Below, one piece after another: positions 33,317 to 54,774 of a stretch of DNA of 64,000 nucleotides; position 1 is the stretch's first letter, and every line of letters begins with the position of its first letter. The position numbers and the translations under genes are program-made. The notes beneath the pieces were generated by a model. That model saw only the letters and a list, made by a program, of their open reading frames with translations, was not told where the DNA came from and searched no databases. The stretch comes from Magallana gigas (lineage: Eukaryota), in assembly GCF_963853765.1 (NCBI RefSeq), contig NC_088862.1, forward strand, positions 5,952,001 through 6,016,000. The letters are read 5' to 3'.

Positions 33317-33491
33317 TGGTGTTTATCTACCTAACACTATCTATATAATAACCGTGGGTTGCCCCGAACTCACCTATACATCTTCGCATGTAGCTGTCAG
33401 CTTCTGGAATCATCTGCACGAGCGGATTCCCGCCCTTTGACGTCATGGCTACTAGGTAGCTCGTACTAGAAATGGTTCCACGAACACCACA
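33317..33491 (-). repeat. Gypsy 3' LTR (175 bp, TG...CA)
   Basis: Three substitutions relative to the 5' LTR at 43134-43308. Preceded on the minus strand by the polypurine tract GAAAGAAGACGGAGGGGAG (33510-33492). Confidence 0.93.
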
Positions 33492-33852
33492 CTCCCCTCC
33501 GTCTTCTTTCTGGGGAGCCAGTCCCACCTACAGGTGGGACCACCGATCTTCAGGGGGGCAATCACGCCCATCCCAGCAACAGCCGGGATAACATGAAAGG
33601 GAACCTGGTCCCACCTACAGGTGGGACCCACAATCAGGGTGGCGCTACAACGCCCATCCCAGCAACAGCCGGGATGAAAATCAGCCGGGCGGCCAAGGCC
33701 ATATCAAAACTGGCCTCCGCCCGTAGGGGTGATGGTAGCTCACCCTACCACTCCTGGAGGATCAGGATGTGCACCCTGCGAACTCCAGGGTAACCCCGCG
33801 GCATCTCTGCCAAAACATACCCCCCGGTCAGGGCTCCAGGAGGGGGACGAGG

Positions 33853-34851
33853 TTACTCCGGGTTGGGGGCGAAACTTGCTCCTGCTCCCGGGCGCCAGGG
33901 CTCCCAAAGGACTAGGGAGCTCTCACTCTGCTCCGGAATGGGAATTTCCCCCACCTGGGGGGCATCCCTCCTTTGACTGGCCTCATCATCATCCGGACGG
34001 GGGTCAGGTTGGTCCAGGAGGCGTCGGGGTGGAGTGGCATCCCCATTGCTGGCGGCTGGTGGGTCGACGACCACTCCCCTAACCGTCGGGGCAGGAACGG
34101 GAGGGACAACCAGGTACCGCAGCCCATAGCGATACAAGGGGTGCCCGGCAATTGTCTCGTCCGAAAACAGGGCCCGGTAAGCCCTGCGTAACGCCGGGCT
34201 CAACCGGGAGACAAGGTATACCTGCACCCTCCAGTGCAGCAGCAGGGCAGGGTGGAGCACGCCCCACAGGCGGTAAACGCGGGGCGGGCTCTCCTGCACA
34301 AAATGGCACAAACTGTCCATGGCGTCTCTAAAGTCCCTTGGAACACCTGCACTAGGTTCCCGGAAAACCTGGAAAGTGGACACACTTTGCACTAGGTCAG
34401 TCAAGGTGGCCCAGCTTCCAATGAGATGGTCCGTCAGCCACTCGCACACCCTCAATCTCATAGAGGTGGCCTCATCCCCCAAAGGCACAGACCTACGGAA
34501 CACAGGGTGGAGGTGGTAGAGGGTCACATGGTCCCTCAGCTTGTGTGTCCTCTCTGGACAGTTGGGAAAGGGACAGGAAGAGAGAGGTACCGCCTCCTGT
34601 GGTGAAGTGGGCCGTCTCCTGGGTGGGCGGGACCTCTGGCACCCGGTTCCTCATCGTCAGGCGGTGATGGCGGCTCCACAGGGGGGCCAGCCATCAGGTT
34701 TCCTCCGTCTTCGGGTTGGGAGGGACCTCTTGCACCCGGTTCCTCGTCATCAGGCTGCGATGGCGGCTCCTCAGGGGGGCCTGCAATCGGTGCCCTTTCA
34801 TACCTCCACTCCCGGCGGGAGGAGGCGTAATCATCGTCGCTATCGGAATCT
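33853..34851 (-). CDS. Gypsy accessory ORF3 of unknown function (acidic/Pro-rich repeats, C2H2-like finger, then ~220 aa)
   Basis: ORFs 34536-34898 and 33853-34527 join through a one-base shift in a CT tract near 34585, giving CPFPNCPERTHKLRDHVTLYH. A strong splice-acceptor-like CTTGTCCTCTTTTTCAG lies just upstream of 34851. Confidence 0.6.
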
Positions 34852-37800
34852 CTGAAAAAGAGGACAAGACGATTAACAACCCCCCCCCCCCAACACAATT
34901 AGGGCAAACAAATTGCTCCAAGGTGGAGGCCTCCTTAGAGGTGACACCCACACACAGACCGTGAAACCATTCATCACAATGATCGCACTGTACCATCAAC
35001 TTCCTGTCGTCCGGGCGCCGACAGGTACAAAACACAATCTCATTAGAGGGGTCCGGACACGAGAGGCATGTGGGTGAGGCTATGTTAAGTCGCTTACAGG
35101 GACGCCCCCGACGTCTGGGGGGCAGGGGAGGACTGTCAAGAGGCCCTCTGGCAGCAGGGGAGCGCTTAGGGGGCCGACCTCGGTGTGGCCGCTGGCTGGG
35201 GGTGGAGTCCAGAGATTCGGGAAGCTTGCGGGCGCCCGCCGCCCCGGCAGGGGGGCTGGGAGCCAAGTCGCTCCCGGTCTCCTGCTTGGTACTCCCAGAG
35301 TTCTCGAAGTTCTCCCTTAGCCGAACTAACCATTGGGGGATGTCCCTGTCGACACACTTTTTCAAGCGGTCGTGATTGGCCACCATGACTGCCGACTTGG
35401 TCTTTACTCGGTACAGATGGGGGGTCAGCTTCTTGACGATGATACCAGGGCCCTTCCAGGACGGGCTAAGCTTGCGGCCATTTCCCTTCACCGTCGCAGT
35501 GTCCAACACATACACAATATCTCCTTCCTCAAAGGGGCGGGTGGCGGCCTTGACGTCGTAGTCTCTTTTCATCCTCTCCTCAGAGGTGTGCAAGCGCCTC
35601 CTGGCCGTCTCGTGAGCAGTCAGTATTTTTTCCTCAAGAGCACCCACATACGTGTCAATATCTGCAGGGCCCTCCTGCATGGGGGACCTGTACATAAGGC
35701 TGGCTGGCGTGTTGACCTCTCTACCCAGCATGAGTTTGTTGGCAGTGAACCCTGAATTACGGTTGACTGCTGAGCGCAAAGCCCCCGCTATCTGGGCCAG
35801 ATGTTCATCCCAACAGTCCTGGGCCTTATCGATGTAACACCTAACTGCATCCATAAGGGTCCTATTGTAGCGCTCCACCTGTCCATTGGCAGACGGACGA
35901 TAGGGGGTGGTGCGGGCCTTATGTATTTCCAGGAGATCGCACACAGCAGTGAACAACTTACTCTCAAAGTTGCGCCCCTGATCGGTAAATATCTGAAGGG
36001 GGCAGCCGAACCTAACAAAGAATTCGTCCACTGCCGCTGTGGCCGTAACCTCAGCTGTCTGGGAGGGGAGGGGGACACACTCTACCCACTTAGTAAACTG
36101 GTCCACCATTACTAGGACATACTCATTCCCCTTCGGCGTCTTAGGGAGCGGTCCCAAGAAGTCGAGGTGCACCCTCTCCATGGGCGCCCCGGCATGATAC
36201 TTTATCATTTCTGCCCTGGCGTGGCGCTGTGGGCGCTTATTTCTACTGCAGGGGCCACAAGTGCTAACAAACCTCTCAGTCTCCCGCATCATCCCATACC
36301 AGTAGCAATGCTCTCTCAGCCGGGCCTTAGTGCGCTCGATACCTTGGTGTCCAGCCGCCGGTACATCGTGGCAGAGACGCAGAACCTCTCTCTTCAGCTC
36401 TATGGGGACGACCAGAACTTTCCTTCTCTCCCCCCTCATCTATTTCTTTCCAAAGGACCCCATCGTTGTCCAACCGCAACAAACCCCTGTTGATATAGTA
36501 ATGTTTGACAGCTGGACTGGCTAGGAACAATTTACCTTCCTCTGGCTCCACATCTCCCTGCAGCCAATCCAAGATTAGGCTAAGCTCTGGGTCGCTTAAC
36601 TGGCTACGGCTCATCTCCTCGGGGGTGAGGCCCACCAAGGAAGGCGGGCCAACCAAGCCCTCCGAGGAAATTCCCATGACACAGGCAAACTGGGGGTGAT
36701 GACTTATCTGGAATTGAGACTGGCATGGGCCATCTGAACTACTCTGACCCTCACAGTCGTCTTCACTGATCCGGCCCAGAAGCTTCTTGGAGACATAGTC
36801 CAGTGCTGCCTCGCTGATAGAGGGCTGGGCTTCTTCTCGGTCACCTATGACGGGGCTCTGATCCTCTGTAGGGCTAGATTCTTCCCCCAACAAGGGGGAA
36901 TATGTCCAACTACAAGGCCTAGCTAGAGGGGCCACATCATCAACTTCTTCCGCAAAAGCCATCCAGGACTAGTGGGCTCTAGTACACTTTGGGCAGCCAC
37001 CACAAGGCAAATCACTGAGGTTAACGGTGAAATCCACCCCCTACACCTGGATGGGGGTGGCGGTTTGGACAGTGCGTCGGCGTTCACATGGCGCCTACCC
37101 GGTCTATGCTGGATCACCATATCGTACTGACTAAGCTCCTCGAGCCAGCGAGCAAGCTGATCTTGAGGGTACTTGAAGTTGAGCAACCAAATAAGGCTAT
37201 GGTGATCCGTGCGAACGATGAATTTACGACCAAGCAAGTAATGTCTGTACATGCGCGTAAATCTGACAACTGCTAGGAGCTCCTTCCGGGTAGTGCAATA
37301 CCTCCTCTGTTCGGCTGACAGGCTGAGACTACCGTAGGCTATCGGCTTTTCTTGCCCGTCCTGGATCTGTGAGAGCTCAGCACCTATCGCCCCCGCTGAC
37401 GCGTCAGTGTCCAGTACAAACTCGCCCTCTGCAGTAGGGAGGGCAAGGACTGGAGGTGAAGTGAGAGCTTTCCGGAGGGCCTCAAATGCAGTCCGCTGCT
37501 CTGGTCCCTATACAAAAGGTTTCTTCCCGGTGACACTGTACAACGGTTGGGCAATCTGGGCAAAGCCGGCAATGAATCCCCTGTAATAGTTGGCAAAGCC
37601 GAGGAACCGCTCCACATCCTTCACCGTGGCAGGCGTCGTCCAGTCCTTAACAGCCTCTATGTACTCTATGTACTCATCCCCCATCTCTACTCCGGTCCCG
37701 CTCACCTGTCTCCCCAAGAACTCCACACGTCTACGGAACAGCTCGCATTTCTTGGGCTTAAACTTTAAGTCGTATTCACGGAAGCGCTGAAACACTATCC

Positions 37801-39200
37801 TCAGATTGGCTAGGTGATCCTCAAAGTCACGCCCAAGCACCAAGGCATCGTCCAGGAATGCCAGGACTATACTCCATGTAAGCCCCCGCAGAACTAAGTT
37901 CATGGAAAGCGGAGTTTGCATCCAGCTTAGAGAACCAAATGTTCCCTGAGAAAGTGTCTAAACACTCGTCGATCAATGGGAGAGGGAATACATCCTTCCT
38001 GGTAACGTTGTTCAGCCTGCGGTAGTCCAGGCACCATCGGACTTGTCCATCCTTCTTACGGATGAGCACCGGCGCTGATGCCCACTCAGACATAGAGGGC
38101 TGAATCACTCCAGCGTCCAGCATTTTCTTCAGACGCGCCTCTTCTTTATCTACAAAGAATGCTGGTGTACGCCGCATCCTCTCCTTGATAGGCGCCGCAC
38201 TGCCAGTATCGATCTCATGCTCTAGAGCAGTAAAGTTTCCAAAGTCAAACTCGCTCTGGGCAAATACATCCTGATATTCTGACAACAATTCAGCGAGCTG
38301 GGACTGCTCCTCCTCACTCAGCTCCGCAGAGGATCGTTCTAGCAGATCCTGCAAATGGGCGGGCACCTTAGGGTGGGATCTCCCAGGCTCACCCTCAGCT
38401 AAACTCCGGACCGCTCTCCTAGGGCAGGGCGCAGGCACATGCAAATCAGCCTCAACTGCCTCTCCCAGGAAGCTCCCTTCCTTCAGAGTGATATCCTTTT
38501 CCGAGGCGTTCACCAGGCAAGCCATAGAGGCATCTCCAGCAGCATGGTAAGTATGGGGCATAAGCAACGCCTCTGACAACTTCTCTATACCCGGAATGGT
38601 CATGAATTCCGACAGACTCCTGTCCAGCTTGAAGGGGCACAATACAGCTGAGCCGGCACGAACGCAGACCTCGCGCACTAGCGTCATGCGAGCAACGCTC
38701 TCCGTCTCACCTCTACCATAGGTCATCTGCATCTCTTCCCCACATAAGTTTATCACCCCGAGCTCCAGGTCCATCTTGGCTTTGTGTTCCCATAGGATGT
38801 CCATTCCCAACAACATCCTGTACTTAAGAGGGGCCAAATAGAGATCCACCTGCTGAGTGTGCTGGTCCACACCAAGGTCAAATGGGCCAGCAACAAATCC
38901 CTGGAGATGGGCTCCACTTCCGGCTTGCAGCAAAGTGACCTGTCTCTTAATGGGGGGGCCTTGACTCCAAATTGTCATAGAACTTCCTCCCAAGTACACT
39001 CACTTCTGCCCCGGTATCCACCACAGCTTCAATGGGGGCTCCCTGGATCCTCAGCTTTATGGTAAATGCCGTCCGTGGGCAAAGCTGGCTTACTGTAACA
39101 CACAACTCCCCCTCCATAGGGACTGCCTGTGGGTTCGAAGGCGTCCGACTTCCATCCTCGCTGTTTCCAGGGGGTCCGGACTCTAAGGTCGTATCCTCCC
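34694..39200 (-). pseudogene. Gypsy pol: protease, RT (internally deleted), RNase H, integrase + AT-hooks + PHD finger
   Basis: VVDTGA (protease); WASAPVL..RWCLDYRRLN, FLDD (RT); DTDAS..ELLA (RNase H); CH..GH..C..C, LDF, TDQG, QVER (integrase); PHD C4HC3 at 34893-35032. Several frameshifts. Confidence 0.92.
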
Positions 39201-39559
39201 TCGGCGGCTCCTGCAGCTCCAGACTGTGGTCTACTGGAGTCAGGATCTCATCAATAGGAACCGGAGGTTCCTCCTCTTTGGTCAGCAGCTCCTCCACAGG
39301 AAAGGGTTCAGGTATGGGTTGATTCCTGAAACGCACTCCGAATCCACCACGCCGCTTGGAATGCTTAAGGCAGGAGCGACGGGTTTCCCCTGACTGACCA
39401 AACTCTGGCTTCACACTCTGCAGGTCCTCTTGACTGTCGTCTGTTCTCTGTCTCTCCAACCCAACATCGCGGTCAGGCGTCAGCGTACGCACAGTCCTTG
39501 GTGGCTGGTTGTCTCTCCCTCCCCTGCCGCTATATCTGGATCCTCCGGAAGTGCCTGGT

Positions 39560-43308: not shown

Positions 43309-43398
43309 CTTAGCCTGGTTCCGGCCTACCCATAATGCTCCGCACAGTAGGCCTGGCACTCACTGTTTAATGGAAGCGCCCATCACAGCAATTTCAAT

Positions 43399-45129
43399 AT
43401 GGCCGACGCTATGGTAAGTGTATGGGGACATACTTTACACCACGATTTCTCTTTCAATTTGCTGTGTCGGTTTAGAAATTTTTATGTTTTACGAATCTTT
43501 GAGGTAAGATTGAACAGCAAATGTAGTATTTCAAAGATGACATTGACTATTTACGGAATAATCTACGGATGCAAGCGGCGAGACAAAACCATGTGATTGC
43601 GCAATAACTGAGACCTGAATGTTACTTCGTTTTAAGTGCATGTTTGAGTGAAACTATATCGAAATTTTGTTTTAACATATTTTTCAGTAAATATAAGAGA
43701 TGAACGATCGTTTTAAATGCGATGTTTTGCTGTGAACTGCTGTTAGACACACCTTACAAATTTTTGTAGCACAATGTAGTGCGGCACGCTTTTGAAGTGT
43801 GCAGGTGCCAGTTCAAGTCTGACCAAAAATTACTTATCGTGTGATTTGACATGCAGGTTACTTGCACACATCGATGCAAAACAAATCTGGGGTTTCTGAT
43901 TATTATAGAGACTACATATTTTATTATTCAATTAATAGCTGCACGGTGTCATCATATATATCATTATTAATTAAGTGGTGTGCCATAGCTGCAACCATAA
44001 ACACGTAGTATAAATATGTTATATATCATCATATTGTGTACAATCTGGTTTCATCACAGGGGCTCGTCACACATCGATGCAAAACAAATCTGGGGTTTCT
44101 GATTATTATAGAGACTACGTATTTTATTATTCAATTAATAGCTGCACGGTGTCATCATATATATCATTATTAATTAAGTGGTGTGCCATAGCTGCAACCA
44201 TAAACACGTAGTATAAATATGTAATATATCATCATATTGTGTACAATCTGGTTTCATCACAGGGGCTCGTCACACATCGATGCAAAACAAATCTGGGGTT
44301 TCTGATTATTATAGAGACTACGTATTTTATTATTCAATTAATAGCTGCACGGTGTCATCATATATATCATTATTAATTAAGTGGTGTGCCATAGCTGCAA
44401 CCATAAACACGTAGTATAAATATGTAATATATCATCATATTGTGTACAATCTGGTTTCATCACAGGGGCTCGTCACGAAGTTTTTTCAACCTTTTATATA
44501 TACCACCTCTATACTATAAATGCATTTTATAGTATAGAGGTGGTATATATAAAAGGTTGAAAAAACTTCGTGACAAGCCCCTGTGGTTTCATGTAGATGT
44601 ACAGATACTGAAGACAACAACATGGATGGATCTAGAGGGAGGGTCAGGAGGATCAAACCCCAAGATGGAAAATTTATGAAACCAGTCTCAGACCCCTATA
44701 ACATTTAAAACAAAATTATTCTTCTGAACCTCCCTCCCCCAAGGAAAATGTCTTCATCTGCCCACACAATGTATTTAATTATTTAAATTTTAATGGCTGT
44801 TTGATTACAAATTTAGGTGGAGACTACAAACGACTAATAAAGAAATGCTACTTGAAACTGTTTATAATTTGTATCTTCTCTGTCTTTGCTATTAATATGC
44901 ATTTTGTTTGGCTAGAATTTCCATACATATGCAAAAGCTGAGAAGCTTCCATCCTTTATCATTCTGGATGACACGGTGACTGAGCATTCATATTCAAGGA
45001 AAACTACTGTTTGTAGTCATTCCACTCCTTTGAAACGAAAAAGAAACAGGGATGCTTCGACTCCAACAGGAGAAACCCCCAAAGTAATTGATAAAAAACA
45101 GGTTGGTCACTGTGAATTTATTCCTACTT

Positions 45130-51455: not shown

Positions 51456-54247
51456 ATTGAAATTGCTGTGATGGGCGCTTCCATTAAACAGTGAGTGCCA
51501 GGCCTACTGTGCGGAGCATTATGGGTAGGCCGGAACCAGGCTAAGTGTGGTGTTCGTGGAACCATTTCTAGTACGAGCTACCTAGTAGCCATGACGTCAA
51601 AGGGCGGTAATCCGCTCGTGCAGATGATTCCAGAAGCTGACAGCTACATGTGAAGATGTATATGTGAGTTCGGGGCAACCCACGGTTATTATATAGATAG
51701 TGTTAGGTAGATAAACACCATATTGGCGCCCAACGTGGGGCCCTGAACTCACGGTATATATTAGACAGGAAAATTTTTTTCCCGCAAAGTGTCAAAGCTG
51801 TTTATTAGGCGTTTTCGTGTTTTTTTCATAGATATACGGGTGTAGCCGCCATTTTGGGGGCCCGCCACGTGCTTAATTCGTGAATTTACTTTCACCTTTG
51901 CATATTTTGTGCATAGTTTTTTCGTTTAAAGTTTTATTGCATTGTTGATAGGTATTGTTTTTTGCATTTAGCACATATTTCTGCATTTTCTCGCATAGTC
52001 TGTGTTGATTTTGACTTCGAACATTTTTGTGTATTGCACCATTCGCTCGTCATGAATGTTTCGTTTGAAGAGGCTTTGCAAGCCTTGGGGTTAGACGACA
52101 CTTTAACTCCCGATGAGGAGTTTGGGTATATTAGTGGCAGACATCATGGCCCAGATAATGTCGGTTTTAGAACTCCGGGTGATATGGGTTACTGTGCTCC
52201 GAGCACTGTTAGGGTAGGTCAGGCTGCCGGCCCATCCCGCTTTCAAGGGGGGCAGGCAGGCTATCCCCAGTGTGGGAGGGGGATTTGGCAGGGTACAGTA
52301 AGGGAGCCAGAGGTCACTGTGGCACACTCTGTTGTGCCTGGGCCAGCCAGTAGTATTCAGCCGGGGGTGTCCCCCGGGTCTTCGGTTAGATGCAGTTCAC
52401 CAGTTGGTTATAGGGAATTTGTCCCGCCCAGCGATTATGTAGGGGTCCCCATGTCACGTCGTTCCCATGTGGCCCTTACCCGTCAGTGTGACCCAACTGT
52501 TAGGGATGTTCCTGTCGACCGAGGGCCTGAGGATACCATTGGAGTCACCCCGCTGCATCCGCCTCATGTTCAAGGGGACCTGAGACCCCACCTGCTAGAC
52601 CTTGATTCCCCCATCACCCCGTCCCCCTCCAACCCCATGCCCGGCGGGCCTGTCAGGCCTGCATACCAGCCCACACCCCAGCCCTGTAGCTATTGCCCTA
52701 CTAGTTCCACCACCCATCCCCAGGACCCTGCTAATGTAAGCCAAGGGCAGCTTGTGGATTTGCCACATGCACCCCAGATTGTTGATTTTCAACCCCAAGC
52801 TTCACTTGCTCAGCCTACCCCTGACCCTGGAAATAGTAACTCAATGTCAGGTAGTAGGCCCCCTCATGGGGTGCCTCGCCATCCTCCCCCTGGGGGGGGG
52901 GAGTACCTTGCCACTAGGGTCCAGGAGTCCTTGGTCCATACCTCACAGGGATCCTTTGGTGTGCGCATGTGCACTGCTGTAACCCAGCCGGTTGCACCCA
53001 GCTGTTATTACCCCACACCCCAGCCCCGGGATGATCGGTATTTAACTGCGCAGGGGGGGCCAATGTCAGGACGCCACCAGTATTTTACAGGTTATGCGGT
53101 CCCAACACCTGTGGCCTCCACCCAGCCCAACAATCCTGGGGGGAGAGGGAGGTAGAATAGCGCAAGTCCAGCCACAGCATCATGAGCCCTTGTCTGGGGA
53201 ACCCCATCCCCTGGGTGACCATACATATGTCCCAGTACCCCATGAATATGAGCCCCCGGCTAGGGATGTACCTCCCCATGCAAGTCACGCGCGGACTCCC
53301 GCTGCGTCTTGCAGTCCCCCTGAGTACGCGCGGATCTCCGCAGCGTCTCACCATCCCCATGAACATGTGCGGTTATCCGCAGCGCGCCCTCATCCCAATG
53401 CAAGTTACGCGCGGACTCCCGCTGCGTCTTGCAGTCCCCATGGATACGCGCGGTTATCCGCAACGTATCACGCACCCCCGGAGTACGCGCGGTCATCCGT
53501 AGTGTCTCGTGGGGTCCCCGAGTTTTCGCAGACGCCCGTCGCGACCTATGGCTCACCTGGAGATGTGCAGCTGCATGCGATGCAGTACAATCCTCAAGAC
53601 TATACCGCAGTGCCAGCCAGTTCCAGCCACCCGACCGTCCGGAATAGACCTAGATATAAGGATCTCCGCTATGATGGCAAGTCCAACTGGAAAGCCTTCC
53701 TCCATAAGTTTGTTCGCTTCTCGCGCAGCCAACAGTGGAATGAGACCGAGCAACACGATCAATTCTGTTTCTTCCTGGAGGGCCCGGCCAGTGAGTATTA
53801 CACCTTGATGCTAGAGACTACCCCCCGCCTGAGGTTCAGCGAAATACTCCGGAAGTTCGACAAGCGCTTTGGCTCATCGGCACCAGACCTCACTCATCAA
53901 CTTAATTTCCAATCAGCGACCCAGAATAGTGGTGAGTCCCTGCGACAGTGGTCTGACAGAGTGCTCACTTTGGCTACTCGTGCATTCCCCCAGCTACCAG
54001 ATGTTCATACCCAGGCTATACCGCGTCTGTGTTATGGAGCTGAGGACCGGGAGGCGGGTTTGTACGCTTTGGATGGCCAACCCAAGACTGTGGAGGAAGC
54101 TGTCGACCGCATGCAGTACTTCCAGCATTCGCGTCAGAGCAGACCCCCCAAGCCTAAGCGGGAGGCGGTTAGGGCCATGGCGGATAAGGACAAGGTAGCT
54201 GAAGATAAGGTAGCTGAAGATAGCCAGAAGGATGGTGAAGGGGAGAA
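50959..54247. repeat. Right arm of the 3.3-kb inverted repeat (Academ TIR + third LTR copy + PBS + truncated gag)
   Basis: Duplicated ORFs in the track (51962-53155 vs 41700-42893; 53094 onward vs 41761 downward). Identity stops at 54247, 53 bp before the ISL2EU right end. Confidence 0.96.
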
Positions 54248-54774
54248 GGTGCGTAAAATAAAAACCAATACGGTAAAACAGAGCATCCCGGAAAACGGCT
54301 ATTCATTCCCTGCTCGTGACAGGTGTGTGTCGTCGTGTCTAAATGATTGCGTAAACTTTGCTAACATGTTTCAGTGTGAAATAACAGCCCCTCCCAAATC
54401 TAATACAATCGATAGCGTGGCCTGGTTTTGTGAGGAACAGACTGCTGGGAGAGATGAAATTGGGCGAGTGATGGACCTCGGGTGTCAAATGTCTTGCCCT
54501 TTCTGGGTTTAAGACCTTTGATTGATTTGGATACAAGAAAAGACTTAGTAGTGTCGTGCTGTGCCTAGTTTATGATTGAATGAAAAAGCACATAAATAGA
54601 GTTCCACTGTCTTAGCCGAGTATTTCTGAATGGACAGGTATGCAATGAATGTGAGTAATGTGTCAGAAGGTATGGGCAAGATGTCTGTGAGGTTATAGAG
54701 ATCAAGGAAAATGTGATTTTTTTTGTAAGCTGTACTGTAGGCTAGTTTGGAGTTATGTGACAGTGATGTGTAAA

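What the first reader, a model, noticed from the sequence alone, without database searches (positions are those of the whole stretch)
43311..51543. AcademH TIRs each contain the same coding first exon (MADAM) used by both convergent genes
Each 585-bp TIR carries CAATATGGCCGACGCTATG followed by GTAAGT: an ATG in a YY1/initiator-like context, 5 codons and a consensus donor (43399-43413 plus; 51455-51441 minus). Neither internal gene has its own obvious start. The helicase frame begins at a TTTAG acceptor (50842, EEDKIRS...) and the transposase frame at a CTAG acceptor (44916, NFHTYAK...), both phase 0, matching this exon. So one sequence serves as transposase-binding end, promoter and shared N-terminal exon for two unrelated proteins. 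This would enforce co-expression and explain why the long TIRs are maintained. TIR-borne promoters are established for maize MuDR; a shared TIR-encoded coding exon is, to my knowledge, not described for Academ.
Basis: partly seen in the sequence, partly recalled or inferred. Interest (0 to 1): 0.82.

Follow-up and report, generated by a model that had tools for sequence, protein, structure and literature searches.

The report
Shared start exon inside transposon ends
In mollusc AcademH transposons, each inverted end carries the same conserved promoter-like motif, start codon and splice donor; gene models show the helicase gene uses it, and the transposase gene very probably does too, although the copy in this window is broken.

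Summary
ATG GCC GAC GCT ATG|GTAAGT lies 89 nt inside both 585-bp TIRs of an 8,233-bp AcademH element in an oyster genome (Magallana gigas, judged from run labels and gene-model matches). It is not chance. Nine further AcademH families or species (five more in this genome, plus two Saccostrea, Haliotis and Ruditapes) carry CAAnATGGC, then 12, 15 or 39 in-frame nt, then a GT donor, 60-99 nt from the tip.

Helicase use is well supported. RefSeq models in four species start with this exon (MADYM, MAADM, MADK, MADK).

Transposase use is inferred. Its conserved exon 2 starts in phase 0 directly at an acceptor in six lineages and lacks an ATG in two. RNA contigs show that acceptor (44916) is used. 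The junction 43413>44916 was not seen; one transcript carried a trapped host exon instead. The helicase junction in this copy could not be tested with reads.

This copy has no target-site duplication. Both of its genes carry frame breaks.

A hemichordate relative has 70-bp TIRs and a separate start for each gene, so the shared exon looks derived. I found no prior description. It is a new variant of MuDR-type TIR promoters.

The parts
43311..43895 (+). Left TIR of the AcademH element (585 bp), tip TAGCCTGGTTCC
   Evidence: inner end; C5 copy defines the tip; tip motif shared with other families
50959..51543 (-). Right TIR, exact mirror of the left TIR
43395..43403 (+). CAATATGGC: the CAAnATGGC block (YY1-consensus-like) that contains the start codon; mirrored at 51451-51459 (-)
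   Evidence: Identical block in all nine ends aligned and also present at the Haliotis and Ruditapes starts, including the hemichordate transposase start. The YY1 assignment is by resemblance only (own knowledge).
43399..43413 (+). Mini-exon ATG GCC GAC GCT ATG (MADAM), followed by donor GTAAGT at 43414-43419; proposed first coding exon of the transposase
   Evidence: Conserved in other families. The junction to 44916 was NOT observed.
51441..51455 (-). Mirror copy of the mini-exon; proposed first coding exon of the helicase
   Evidence: Homologous exons are used by RefSeq helicase models in Saccostrea cucullata, S. echinata, M. gigas (family E) and Haliotis asinina.
44916..45101 (+). Transposase exon 2 (NFHTYAKAEKLPSF...STPTGETPKVIDKKQ); phase 0, no in-frame ATG
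   Evidence: The acceptor is used in spliced RNA contigs (X1 record 3). The protein is conserved in families A-D and S. cucullata. Homologous exon-2 starts were identified by motif search in family E and Haliotis.
45317..48804 (+). Transposase exons 3-6 (45317-45463, 45783-45987, 46178-46745, 46951-48804), Myb-like region plus DUF6589 core. Frame breaks lie at the exon 2/3 junction, at about 47102-47224 and at about 48570.
   Evidence: GT..AG joints; Pfam DUF6589, E 7.6e-37; frame analysis against homologues
49886..50842 (-). Helicase exon 2 (EEDKIRSCLDIYNKRFG...; RecQ-like DEAD domain); opens at tttag|G, phase 0
   Evidence: (PF00270, E 1.6e-16)
48998..49820 (-). Helicase downstream exons (49668-49820; 48998-49469), with a frame break near 49310 in the RecQ Zn-binding region
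43865..44476 (+). Three tandem 203-bp units. Each begins with the 31-nt inner end of the TIR. They lie in the proposed transposase intron 1.
44461..44585 (.). 125-bp palindromic high-copy repeat (MITE-like) inserted in the proposed intron 1
   Evidence: summed contig depth in the tens to hundreds in the four runs
40599..43310 (-). Gypsy 5' LTR plus gag sequence abutting the left TIR tip; outer part of the left palindrome arm
51544..54256 (+). Mirror copy of the same Gypsy 5' portion abutting the right TIR tip; outer part of the right palindrome arm

Best explanation
The element at 43311-51543 is an AcademH DNA transposon with two convergent genes, a DUF6589-type transposase on the + strand and a RecQ-like helicase on the - strand.

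In mollusc AcademH lineages the TIR has grown to include a terminal transcription and translation start module. The module is a CAAnATGGC motif (YY1-consensus-like) whose ATG is the start codon, then 3-4 further codons (12 in Ruditapes), then a consensus splice donor, about 60-99 nt from the tip. Because the module sits in the inverted repeat, an identical copy faces inward at each end.

At the helicase end it is spliced in phase 0 to the helicase body. This step is shown by gene models in relatives. At the transposase end the same module is most likely spliced in phase 0 to transposase exon 2. This step is inferred.

The five residues themselves are probably unimportant. What is conserved is the motif with its ATG, the reading phase and the donor.

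The window copy is a decayed relic. Both genes carry frame breaks, there is no target-site duplication, and the element sits in a mirrored 3.3-kb block. The transposase-family transcripts detected in public runs come from other copies and use other 5' exons.
For: (1) Conservation. The module is present in families win, D, C, E, F, G of this genome and in S. cucullata, S. echinata, Haliotis asinina and Ruditapes. The peptides are MADAM, MASDM, MATRK, MADK, MADSM, MAECM, MADYM, MAADM, MADK and MADAIVKDSTHTD. All are 12, 15 or 39 nt, none has a stop, and all end at GTRAG, GTAAA or GTACG. The surrounding TIR differs by many indels that are not multiples of three. The pattern gave 40 genome hits against 0 for the control.

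(2) Helicase. RefSeq XP_062621809.1, XP_061193772.1, XP_065933778.1, XP_065939352.1, XP_034339165.1 and the Haliotis model P0027 start with this exon. I located it inside the TIR of the cognate element in S. cucullata (+93 in a 459-bp TIR), S. echinata (+90 in 365 bp), Haliotis (about +97 in 450 bp) and M. gigas family E (+95 in 1131 bp). The window's helicase frame opens at the homologous acceptor and has no earlier ATG.

(3) Transposase. Exon 2 begins with conserved [NPS]F[HQ]xY[AC]K...PSF directly at a polypyrimidine-AG acceptor in phase 0 in win, D, C, E, S. cucullata and Haliotis, and it has no in-frame ATG in win and E. Family D reads through in frame as MASDM|PFQHEYAK...|SVGSKWEISE. Spliced RNA contigs use the 44916 acceptor, and a trapped host exon joins it in phase 0. 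In Ptychodera flava the RefSeq transposase model starts at GGCAAAATGGCAGAT, +97 from the tip, which is the homologous motif.

(4) AcademH identity of the relatives: 9-10-bp TSDs in six elements.
Against: No read or contig shows 43413>44916. In run X1 the 28 nt upstream of 44916 match an exon of an IBR-domain host gene on C9. X28 record 19 links TIR sequence to exon 2 but lacks 43368-43414, which contains the mini-exon, and retains 43415-43469.

Families D, C and S. cucullata have an in-frame ATG at or near the start of exon 2, so their transposases could start there.

No bivalve or gastropod transposase gene model with a MAxxM start was found.

Whether the RefSeq helicase models rest on transcript evidence was not checked.

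The helicase junction of this family was not tested with reads.

Exon 2 and exon 3 of this family are out of frame by 1 nt, even in the expressed X1 copy.
Confidence: 0.68

Rival explanations
1. The module works only for the helicase. The copy at the transposase end is a passive mirror image kept by TIR homogenisation, and the transposase is expressed from another start: an internal ATG at exon 2, read-in, or trapped host exons.
For: All direct gene-model support is for the helicase. RNA contigs show other 5' exons on the transposase. D, C and S. cucullata have an in-frame ATG at or near the exon 2 start. Arm-to-arm copying clearly occurs.
Against: Exon 2 has no ATG in win and in the intact multi-copy family E, and it opens right after a stop. 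It is phase-0 compatible in six lineages. An inward-facing promoter plus donor upstream of a strong acceptor would be spliced unless something blocked it. The Ptychodera transposase starts at the homologous motif.
Confidence: 0.22
2. The conserved block is only a DNA-level signal, a transposase-binding site or a promoter/YY1 site. Its ATG and GT are incidental, and the mini-exon in gene models is an annotation artefact.
For: CAAnATGGC is the most invariant block and resembles a transcription-factor site. A second AATGGCGGC-like box lies about 30 nt upstream. I could not check the transcript support of the Gnomon models.
Against: The same tiny exon was chosen in the RefSeq annotations of four species and in more than one M./C. 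gigas annotation release, for families only 37-53% identical to the window's helicase. A 12-15-nt exon cannot be placed by protein homology. The donor and the multiple-of-three length are conserved although codons 3-4 vary. The helicase has no other start before its Q-motif region.
Confidence: 0.06
3. At this particular locus nothing functions. The element is a dead copy, and its perfect TIRs come from a recent inverted duplication or from gene conversion.
For: Frame breaks in both genes. No TSD. A 3.3-kb mirrored block including Gypsy flank. The only other genomic copy is 5'-truncated and degraded. The transcripts differ from the window copy by indels.
Against: This does not conflict with the family-level explanation; it concerns only this copy.
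Confidence: 0.85

Closest known systems
MuDR / Mutator of maize (convergent mudrA and mudrB transcribed from promoters in the long TIRs)
   Same: It has two convergent genes, each driven from an almost identical long TIR that also holds transposase-binding sites. PMC3310237 states that Mutator TIRs harbour binding sites and promoters.
   Different: To my knowledge the MuDR TIRs supply the promoter and 5' UTR, not a shared start codon plus splice donor. Here the TIR also supplies the ATG, a few codons and the donor, so two unrelated proteins would share an N-terminal mini-exon. The superfamily (Academ, not Mutator) and the hosts (molluscs) also differ.
AcademH lineage of Academ DNA transposons (Kojima 2020, Mob DNA 11:15; cited in PMC10045372 and PMC10799480; full text not held)
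   Same: It has an Academ-type transposase plus a RecQ-like helicase, TIRs, and 9-10-bp TSDs (seen here in six related elements).
   Different: I could not read the paper. The papers I could read that cite it, and the reachable literature generally, mention nothing about a TIR-borne coding exon. The window copy itself lacks a TSD.
En/Spm (CACTA) TnpA/TnpD and other transposons whose proteins share a first exon by alternative splicing
   Same: One 5' exon serves two different proteins.
   Different: In those elements there is one promoter and one strand, and the two products arise by alternative splicing. Here two physical copies of the exon sit on opposite strands at opposite ends (own knowledge, not tested).
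YY1-type core promoters in which the AAnATGGCG motif overlaps the translation start, and the LINE-1 5' UTR YY1 site
   Same: The block CAA[GACT]ATGGCG fits the YY1 consensus, and its ATG is the start codon with a short leader.
   Different: This is a resemblance recalled from memory only. No binding, TSS or oyster YY1 data were examined.

Membership tests
AcademH (Academ superfamily DNA transposon) | Academ-type DDE transposase | tested here: met
   The 47259-48578 ORF hits Pfam DUF6589 (E 7.6e-37). Homologues are widespread in molluscs and hemichordates, next to RecQ-like helicases and inside TIR/TSD-bounded elements. That DUF6589 equals the Academ transposase is my inference, since Pfam gives no name. 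This copy has frame breaks.
AcademH (Academ superfamily DNA transposon) | A second gene encoding a superfamily-2 (RecQ-like) helicase | tested here: met
   PF00270 DEAD (E 1.6e-16) and a weak RecQ_Zn_bind hit. It is 53% identical to 'ATP-dependent DNA helicase Q1-like' models. There is a frame break near 49310.
AcademH (Academ superfamily DNA transposon) | 9-10-bp target-site duplication (PMC10045372, citing Kojima 2020) | tested here: not met
   The window copy's flanks are ...caccacact| and |agtgtggtg..., which are mirror images and not a direct repeat. The feature is met in six related elements (D 9 bp, C 10, E 10, S. cucullata 9, S. echinata 10, Ptychodera 9). The absence here therefore reflects a rearranged locus and not a different family.
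AcademH (Academ superfamily DNA transposon) | Terminal inverted repeats with a family-typical tip | tested here: met
   585-bp TIRs. The tip TAGYCTGKTWCC is shared by the nine aligned element ends, including Ptychodera; the Haliotis tip differs at its first base.
MuDR-like 'TIR promoter' design | Transcripts of both convergent genes initiate inside the TIRs | tested here: inconclusive
   No TSS data. One RNA contig begins at TIR position +36 and continues into transposase exon 2, but it lacks the mini-exon. The gene models place the helicase start codon in the TIR.

The most novel reading that the evidence does not exclude
In mollusc AcademH transposons the TIR is at once the transposition end, the promoter, and a shared first coding exon with its donor for two unrelated, convergently transcribed proteins. 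This state evolved from an ancestor that had short TIRs and a separate terminal start for each gene, as in Ptychodera. The exposed donor and the strong phase-0 acceptors also make these elements natural exon traps and exon donors for host genes.
Probability: 0.6. Interest if true: 0.72.

Novelty: new variant of a known kind. Interest (0 to 1): 0.62.

Why it matters
If both genes really start in the TIR, AcademH would be a clear case of one repeated sequence serving three roles: recombination end, promoter and shared N-terminal exon. Any homogenisation of the ends would then reset the expression signals of both genes together.

This gives a concrete rationale for the long TIRs in this lineage. 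It also gives a testable evolutionary series, from a hemichordate with 70-bp TIRs and separate starts to molluscs with TIRs of several hundred bp (up to 1131 bp) and a shared start.

It matters for annotation as well. A 12-15-nt first exon inside a repeat is easily missed or masked, which leaves 'start-less' transposase and helicase models. The phase-0 acceptor was also seen capturing a host exon, which is a route to host-transposase fusion transcripts.

Tried and rejected
- Logan contig encoding the near-identical helicase fragment (P0001, L035): unspliced, so uninformative.
- Read laying on 43280-49279 with four runs: it showed the transposase introns but no 43413>44916 joint.
- Search for spliced junctions as DNA. 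Retro-copies in the genome: none. JGI metagenome contigs: 11 hits, all chance matches in unrelated sequence.
- The X28 variant that lacks 47 nt is not present in the genome DNA.
- Transposase models with a MAxxM start. P0098 'MSSYM' is contiguous ORF and not a mini-exon. P0307 'MAKR' is a bacterial-style GTG call on a contig. The exhaustive representative search with P0095 gave almost no models that keep the N-terminus.
- Kojima 2020 could not be read. The literature searches found no description of a TIR-borne coding exon.
- Assembly artefact as the cause of the long mirrored arms: unlikely. At locus A one arm carries a private ~950-bp insertion and the other a private 37-nt duplication.
- Programmed -1 frameshift at the A-run that ends exon 2: considered, but the heptamer is imperfect and nothing supports it. 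I treat it as a lesion.
Full report
**What is at the locus**

The stretch 43311-51543 is an 8,233-bp DNA transposon with 585-bp terminal inverted repeats (43311-43895 and 50959-51543). A DUF6589-type transposase lies on the + strand (Pfam E 7.6e-37). A RecQ-like DEAD-box helicase lies on the - strand (PF00270, E 1.6e-16, plus a weak RecQ_Zn_bind hit). Run labels and matches to annotated proteins point to the Pacific oyster Magallana gigas.

The tip TAGCCTGG at 43311 is confirmed in two ways. A second, 5'-truncated copy on chromosome C5 has an unrelated flank. The tip motif TAGYCTGKTWCC is also shared by related families.

**Corrections to the picture of this copy**

- The inverted repeat does not stop at the TIR tips. 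Each arm is about 3.3 kb (40599-43895 and 50959-54256) and essentially identical (99.9-100% by the two tools). The outer 2.7 kb is the 5' LTR and gag region of a Gypsy element, mirrored on both sides. A complete Gypsy copy is present only on the left, at about 33317-43310, with LTRs 98.3% identical.
- As a result there is no target-site duplication.
- The perfect identity of the two TIRs here says nothing about selection.
- Both genes are damaged. Transposase exon 2 is one nucleotide out of frame with exon 3. The DUF6589 region changes frame at about 47102 and returns at about 47224. The last 78 codons are in another frame from about 48570. The helicase changes frame near 49310.

**Is the mini-exon more than chance? 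Yes.**

I fetched other AcademH elements from the same genome with the transposase as probe. Families D, C and E have a transposase only 39-50% identical to the window's. Their TIRs are 656, 509 and 1131 bp and show the same convergent layout. All carry the same module 86-95 nt from the tip:

- D: CAAGATGGCGTCCGATATG|GTAAGT (MASDM)
- C: CAACATGGCGACTAGAAAG|GTAAAA (MATRK)
- E: CAAAATGGCGGACAAA|GTAAGT (MADK)

A genome-wide pattern search (tip, 55-85 nt, CAANATGGC, 3-14 nt, GTRAR) gave 40 hits and none for the reversed control. Most hits were inverted pairs 8-11 kb apart. Two further families emerged: G with MAECM and F with MADSM.

Outside this genome the module occurs in:

- Saccostrea cucullata: MADYM|GTGAGT
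- S. echinata: MAADM|GTAAGT
- the abalone Haliotis asinina: MADK|GTACGT
- the clam Ruditapes philippinarum: MADAIVKDSTHTD|GTAAGA

.

In an alignment of nine ends, the invariant blocks are the tip and CAAnATGGC, and the bivalve ends also share the ATG|GTRAGT junction. Codons 3-4 vary freely. The only length differences in the exon are in frame (12, 15 or 39 nt), whereas the rest of the TIR differs by many indels that are not multiples of three.

**Helicase half of the claim: well supported**

RefSeq models begin with exactly this exon: XP_062621809.1 (S. cucullata), XP_061193772.1 (S. echinata), XP_065933778.1, XP_065939352.1 and XP_034339165.1 (M./C. gigas, family E), and the H. asinina model.

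In each case I placed the exon inside the TIR of a complete element: +93 in a 459-bp TIR, +90 in a 365-bp TIR, +95 in a 1131-bp TIR, and about +97 in a 450-bp TIR. In each case it is spliced in phase 0 to the exon homologous to the one that opens at 50842 in the window.

The window's helicase frame opens at tttag|GAAGAAGAC, with a stop codon overlapping the AG. The first in-frame ATG would delete the Q-motif region.

Two things were not checked. I did not verify the read support of these Gnomon models.

**Transposase half: coherent but inferred**

The evidence in favour:

- The N-terminal conserved residues ([NPS]F[HQ]xY[AC]K...PSF...[ST]PTGxTP) start directly at a polypyrimidine-AG acceptor in phase 0 in the window, D, C, E, S. 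cucullata and Haliotis.
- Exon 2 has no in-frame ATG in the window or in the intact multi-copy family E.
- Family D reads through in frame as MASDM|PFQHEYAK...KVQCQ|SVGSKWEISE.
- Public RNA-run assemblies contain clearly spliced transposase transcripts with five GT..AG introns, and these use the 44916 acceptor.

The evidence against:

- The predicted joint 43413>44916 was not seen.
- In run X1 the 28 nt upstream of the acceptor match an ATG-initiated, phase-0 exon of an IBR-domain host gene on chromosome C9 (26 of 28 nt, followed there by GTAAGT). This is an exon-trapping chimera from a copy that is not in this assembly.
- X28 record 19 links TIR sequence (43346-43367 and 43415-43469) to exon 2. 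It lacks the 47 nt that contain the mini-exon and has 51 unaligned letters. That junction is absent from the genome. I read it as a deletion derivative in another individual, but this is unresolved.
- Contigs show presence, not absence. Both genomic copies of this family are dead. The negative result is therefore weak.

**Evolutionary context**

In the hemichordate Ptychodera flava the AcademH TIR is only 70 bp. The RefSeq transposase model starts at GGCAAAATGGCAGAT, +97 from the tip and outside the TIR. The helicase has its own ATG (TCAATATGTCG, +170) with no intron.

Terminal starts in a CAAnATG context therefore look ancestral for both genes. In molluscs the TIR appears to have expanded over one such start, so that both ends now carry the same one.

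All six related elements I checked have clean 9-10-bp target-site duplications. This is the AcademH hallmark according to PMC10045372, which cites Kojima 2020.

**Why the TIRs are identical**

At locus A (C9:27146500-27182500) an insertion of about 10.6 kb sits at TIR position ~47 in both arms, at 99.9% identity. One arm has a private ~950-bp MITE and the other a private 37-nt tip duplication. The arms are therefore real DNA, and they are copied onto one another.

Together with the mirrored Gypsy flank in the window, this shows that arm-to-arm copying alone can keep TIRs identical.

**Verdict**

- Use by the helicase is well supported.
- Use by the transposase is likely (about 0.75) but not shown.
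- Nothing is functional at this particular copy.
- I found no description of a TIR-borne shared coding exon in the reachable literature, but the key AcademH paper could not be read.
- The closest known design is MuDR, whose long TIRs carry the promoters of two convergent genes (PMC3310237).
- I class the finding as a new variant of a known kind.

Noticed in passing
window 40599-43310 and 51544-54256: 2.7 kb of Gypsy 5' LTR plus gag abuts both TIR tips as near-perfect mirror copies (99.9-100%). The full Gypsy lies only on the left (about 33317-43310, LTRs 98.3% identical, PBS at about 43114-43133). There is no Academ TSD and no Gypsy TSD. The structure looks like an inverted duplication flush with the transposon ends (alternative transposition, hairpin repair or arm conversion).
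   Followed up: partly
G000:C9:27146500-27182500 (L074+L036+L037+L075): A family A/D AcademH element with an insertion of about 10.6 kb at TIR position ~47 in BOTH TIRs (99.9% identical). One arm also has a private ~950-bp MITE and the other a 37-nt tip duplication. The arms are real DNA and have been copied arm-to-arm.
   Followed up: partly
G000:C9:20317851-20317899 (L047 about 1481-1529); X1 contig: A transposase transcript in run X1 carries, upstream of the 44916 acceptor, an exon 93% identical to the ATG-initiated first exon of an IBR-domain (RBR E3-type) host gene, joined in phase 0. This is exon trapping by an AcademH copy that is absent from this assembly.
   Followed up: partly
window 43346-43469 and 44928-45047 (X28 record 19): An RNA-library contig joins TIR sequence that lacks 43368-43414 (the mini-exon region, with TAA microhomology) to 51 unknown letters and then to exon 2 from 44928. 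The junction is not in the genome DNA. It is probably an internally deleted derivative in another individual.
   Followed up: partly
window 43865-44476: Three tandem 203-bp units, each starting with the 31-nt inner end of the TIR (CACACATCGATGCAAAACAAATCTGGGGTTT). They are present only on the transposase side.
   Followed up: no
window 44461-44585: A 125-bp near-perfect palindrome (60-nt arms). It is a high-copy repeat, with summed contig depth in the tens to hundreds in the four RNA-run assemblies, and is probably a MITE inserted in the proposed intron.
   Followed up: no
e.g. G000:C3:4918319-4918401, C10:15821642-15821721, C9:46483226-46483296: Palindromes of about 80 bp made of two copies of the terminal ~40 nt of this AcademH TIR. 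These are minimal MITE-like derivatives of the family.
   Followed up: no
window 45090-45101 and 45319 onward: Exon 2 ends in an A-run (GATAAAAAACAG) and is 1 nt out of frame with the Myb-like exon 3, both in the window and in the expressed X1 copy. Family D is in frame at the same junction. This is either a family-wide lesion or, less likely, a recoding site.
   Followed up: partly
window 45099>45317 versus 45099>45783: Alternative splicing of the transposase transcripts: exon 3 (45317-45463, the Myb-like WSEKEK region) is included in X1 and skipped in X25 and X28.
   Followed up: no
TIR about 43364-43378, and equivalents in D, C, G: A second conserved box, CAATGGCGGCG-like, lies about 30 nt upstream of the CAAnATGGC start motif. 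This could be a pair of YY1-like sites.
   Followed up: no
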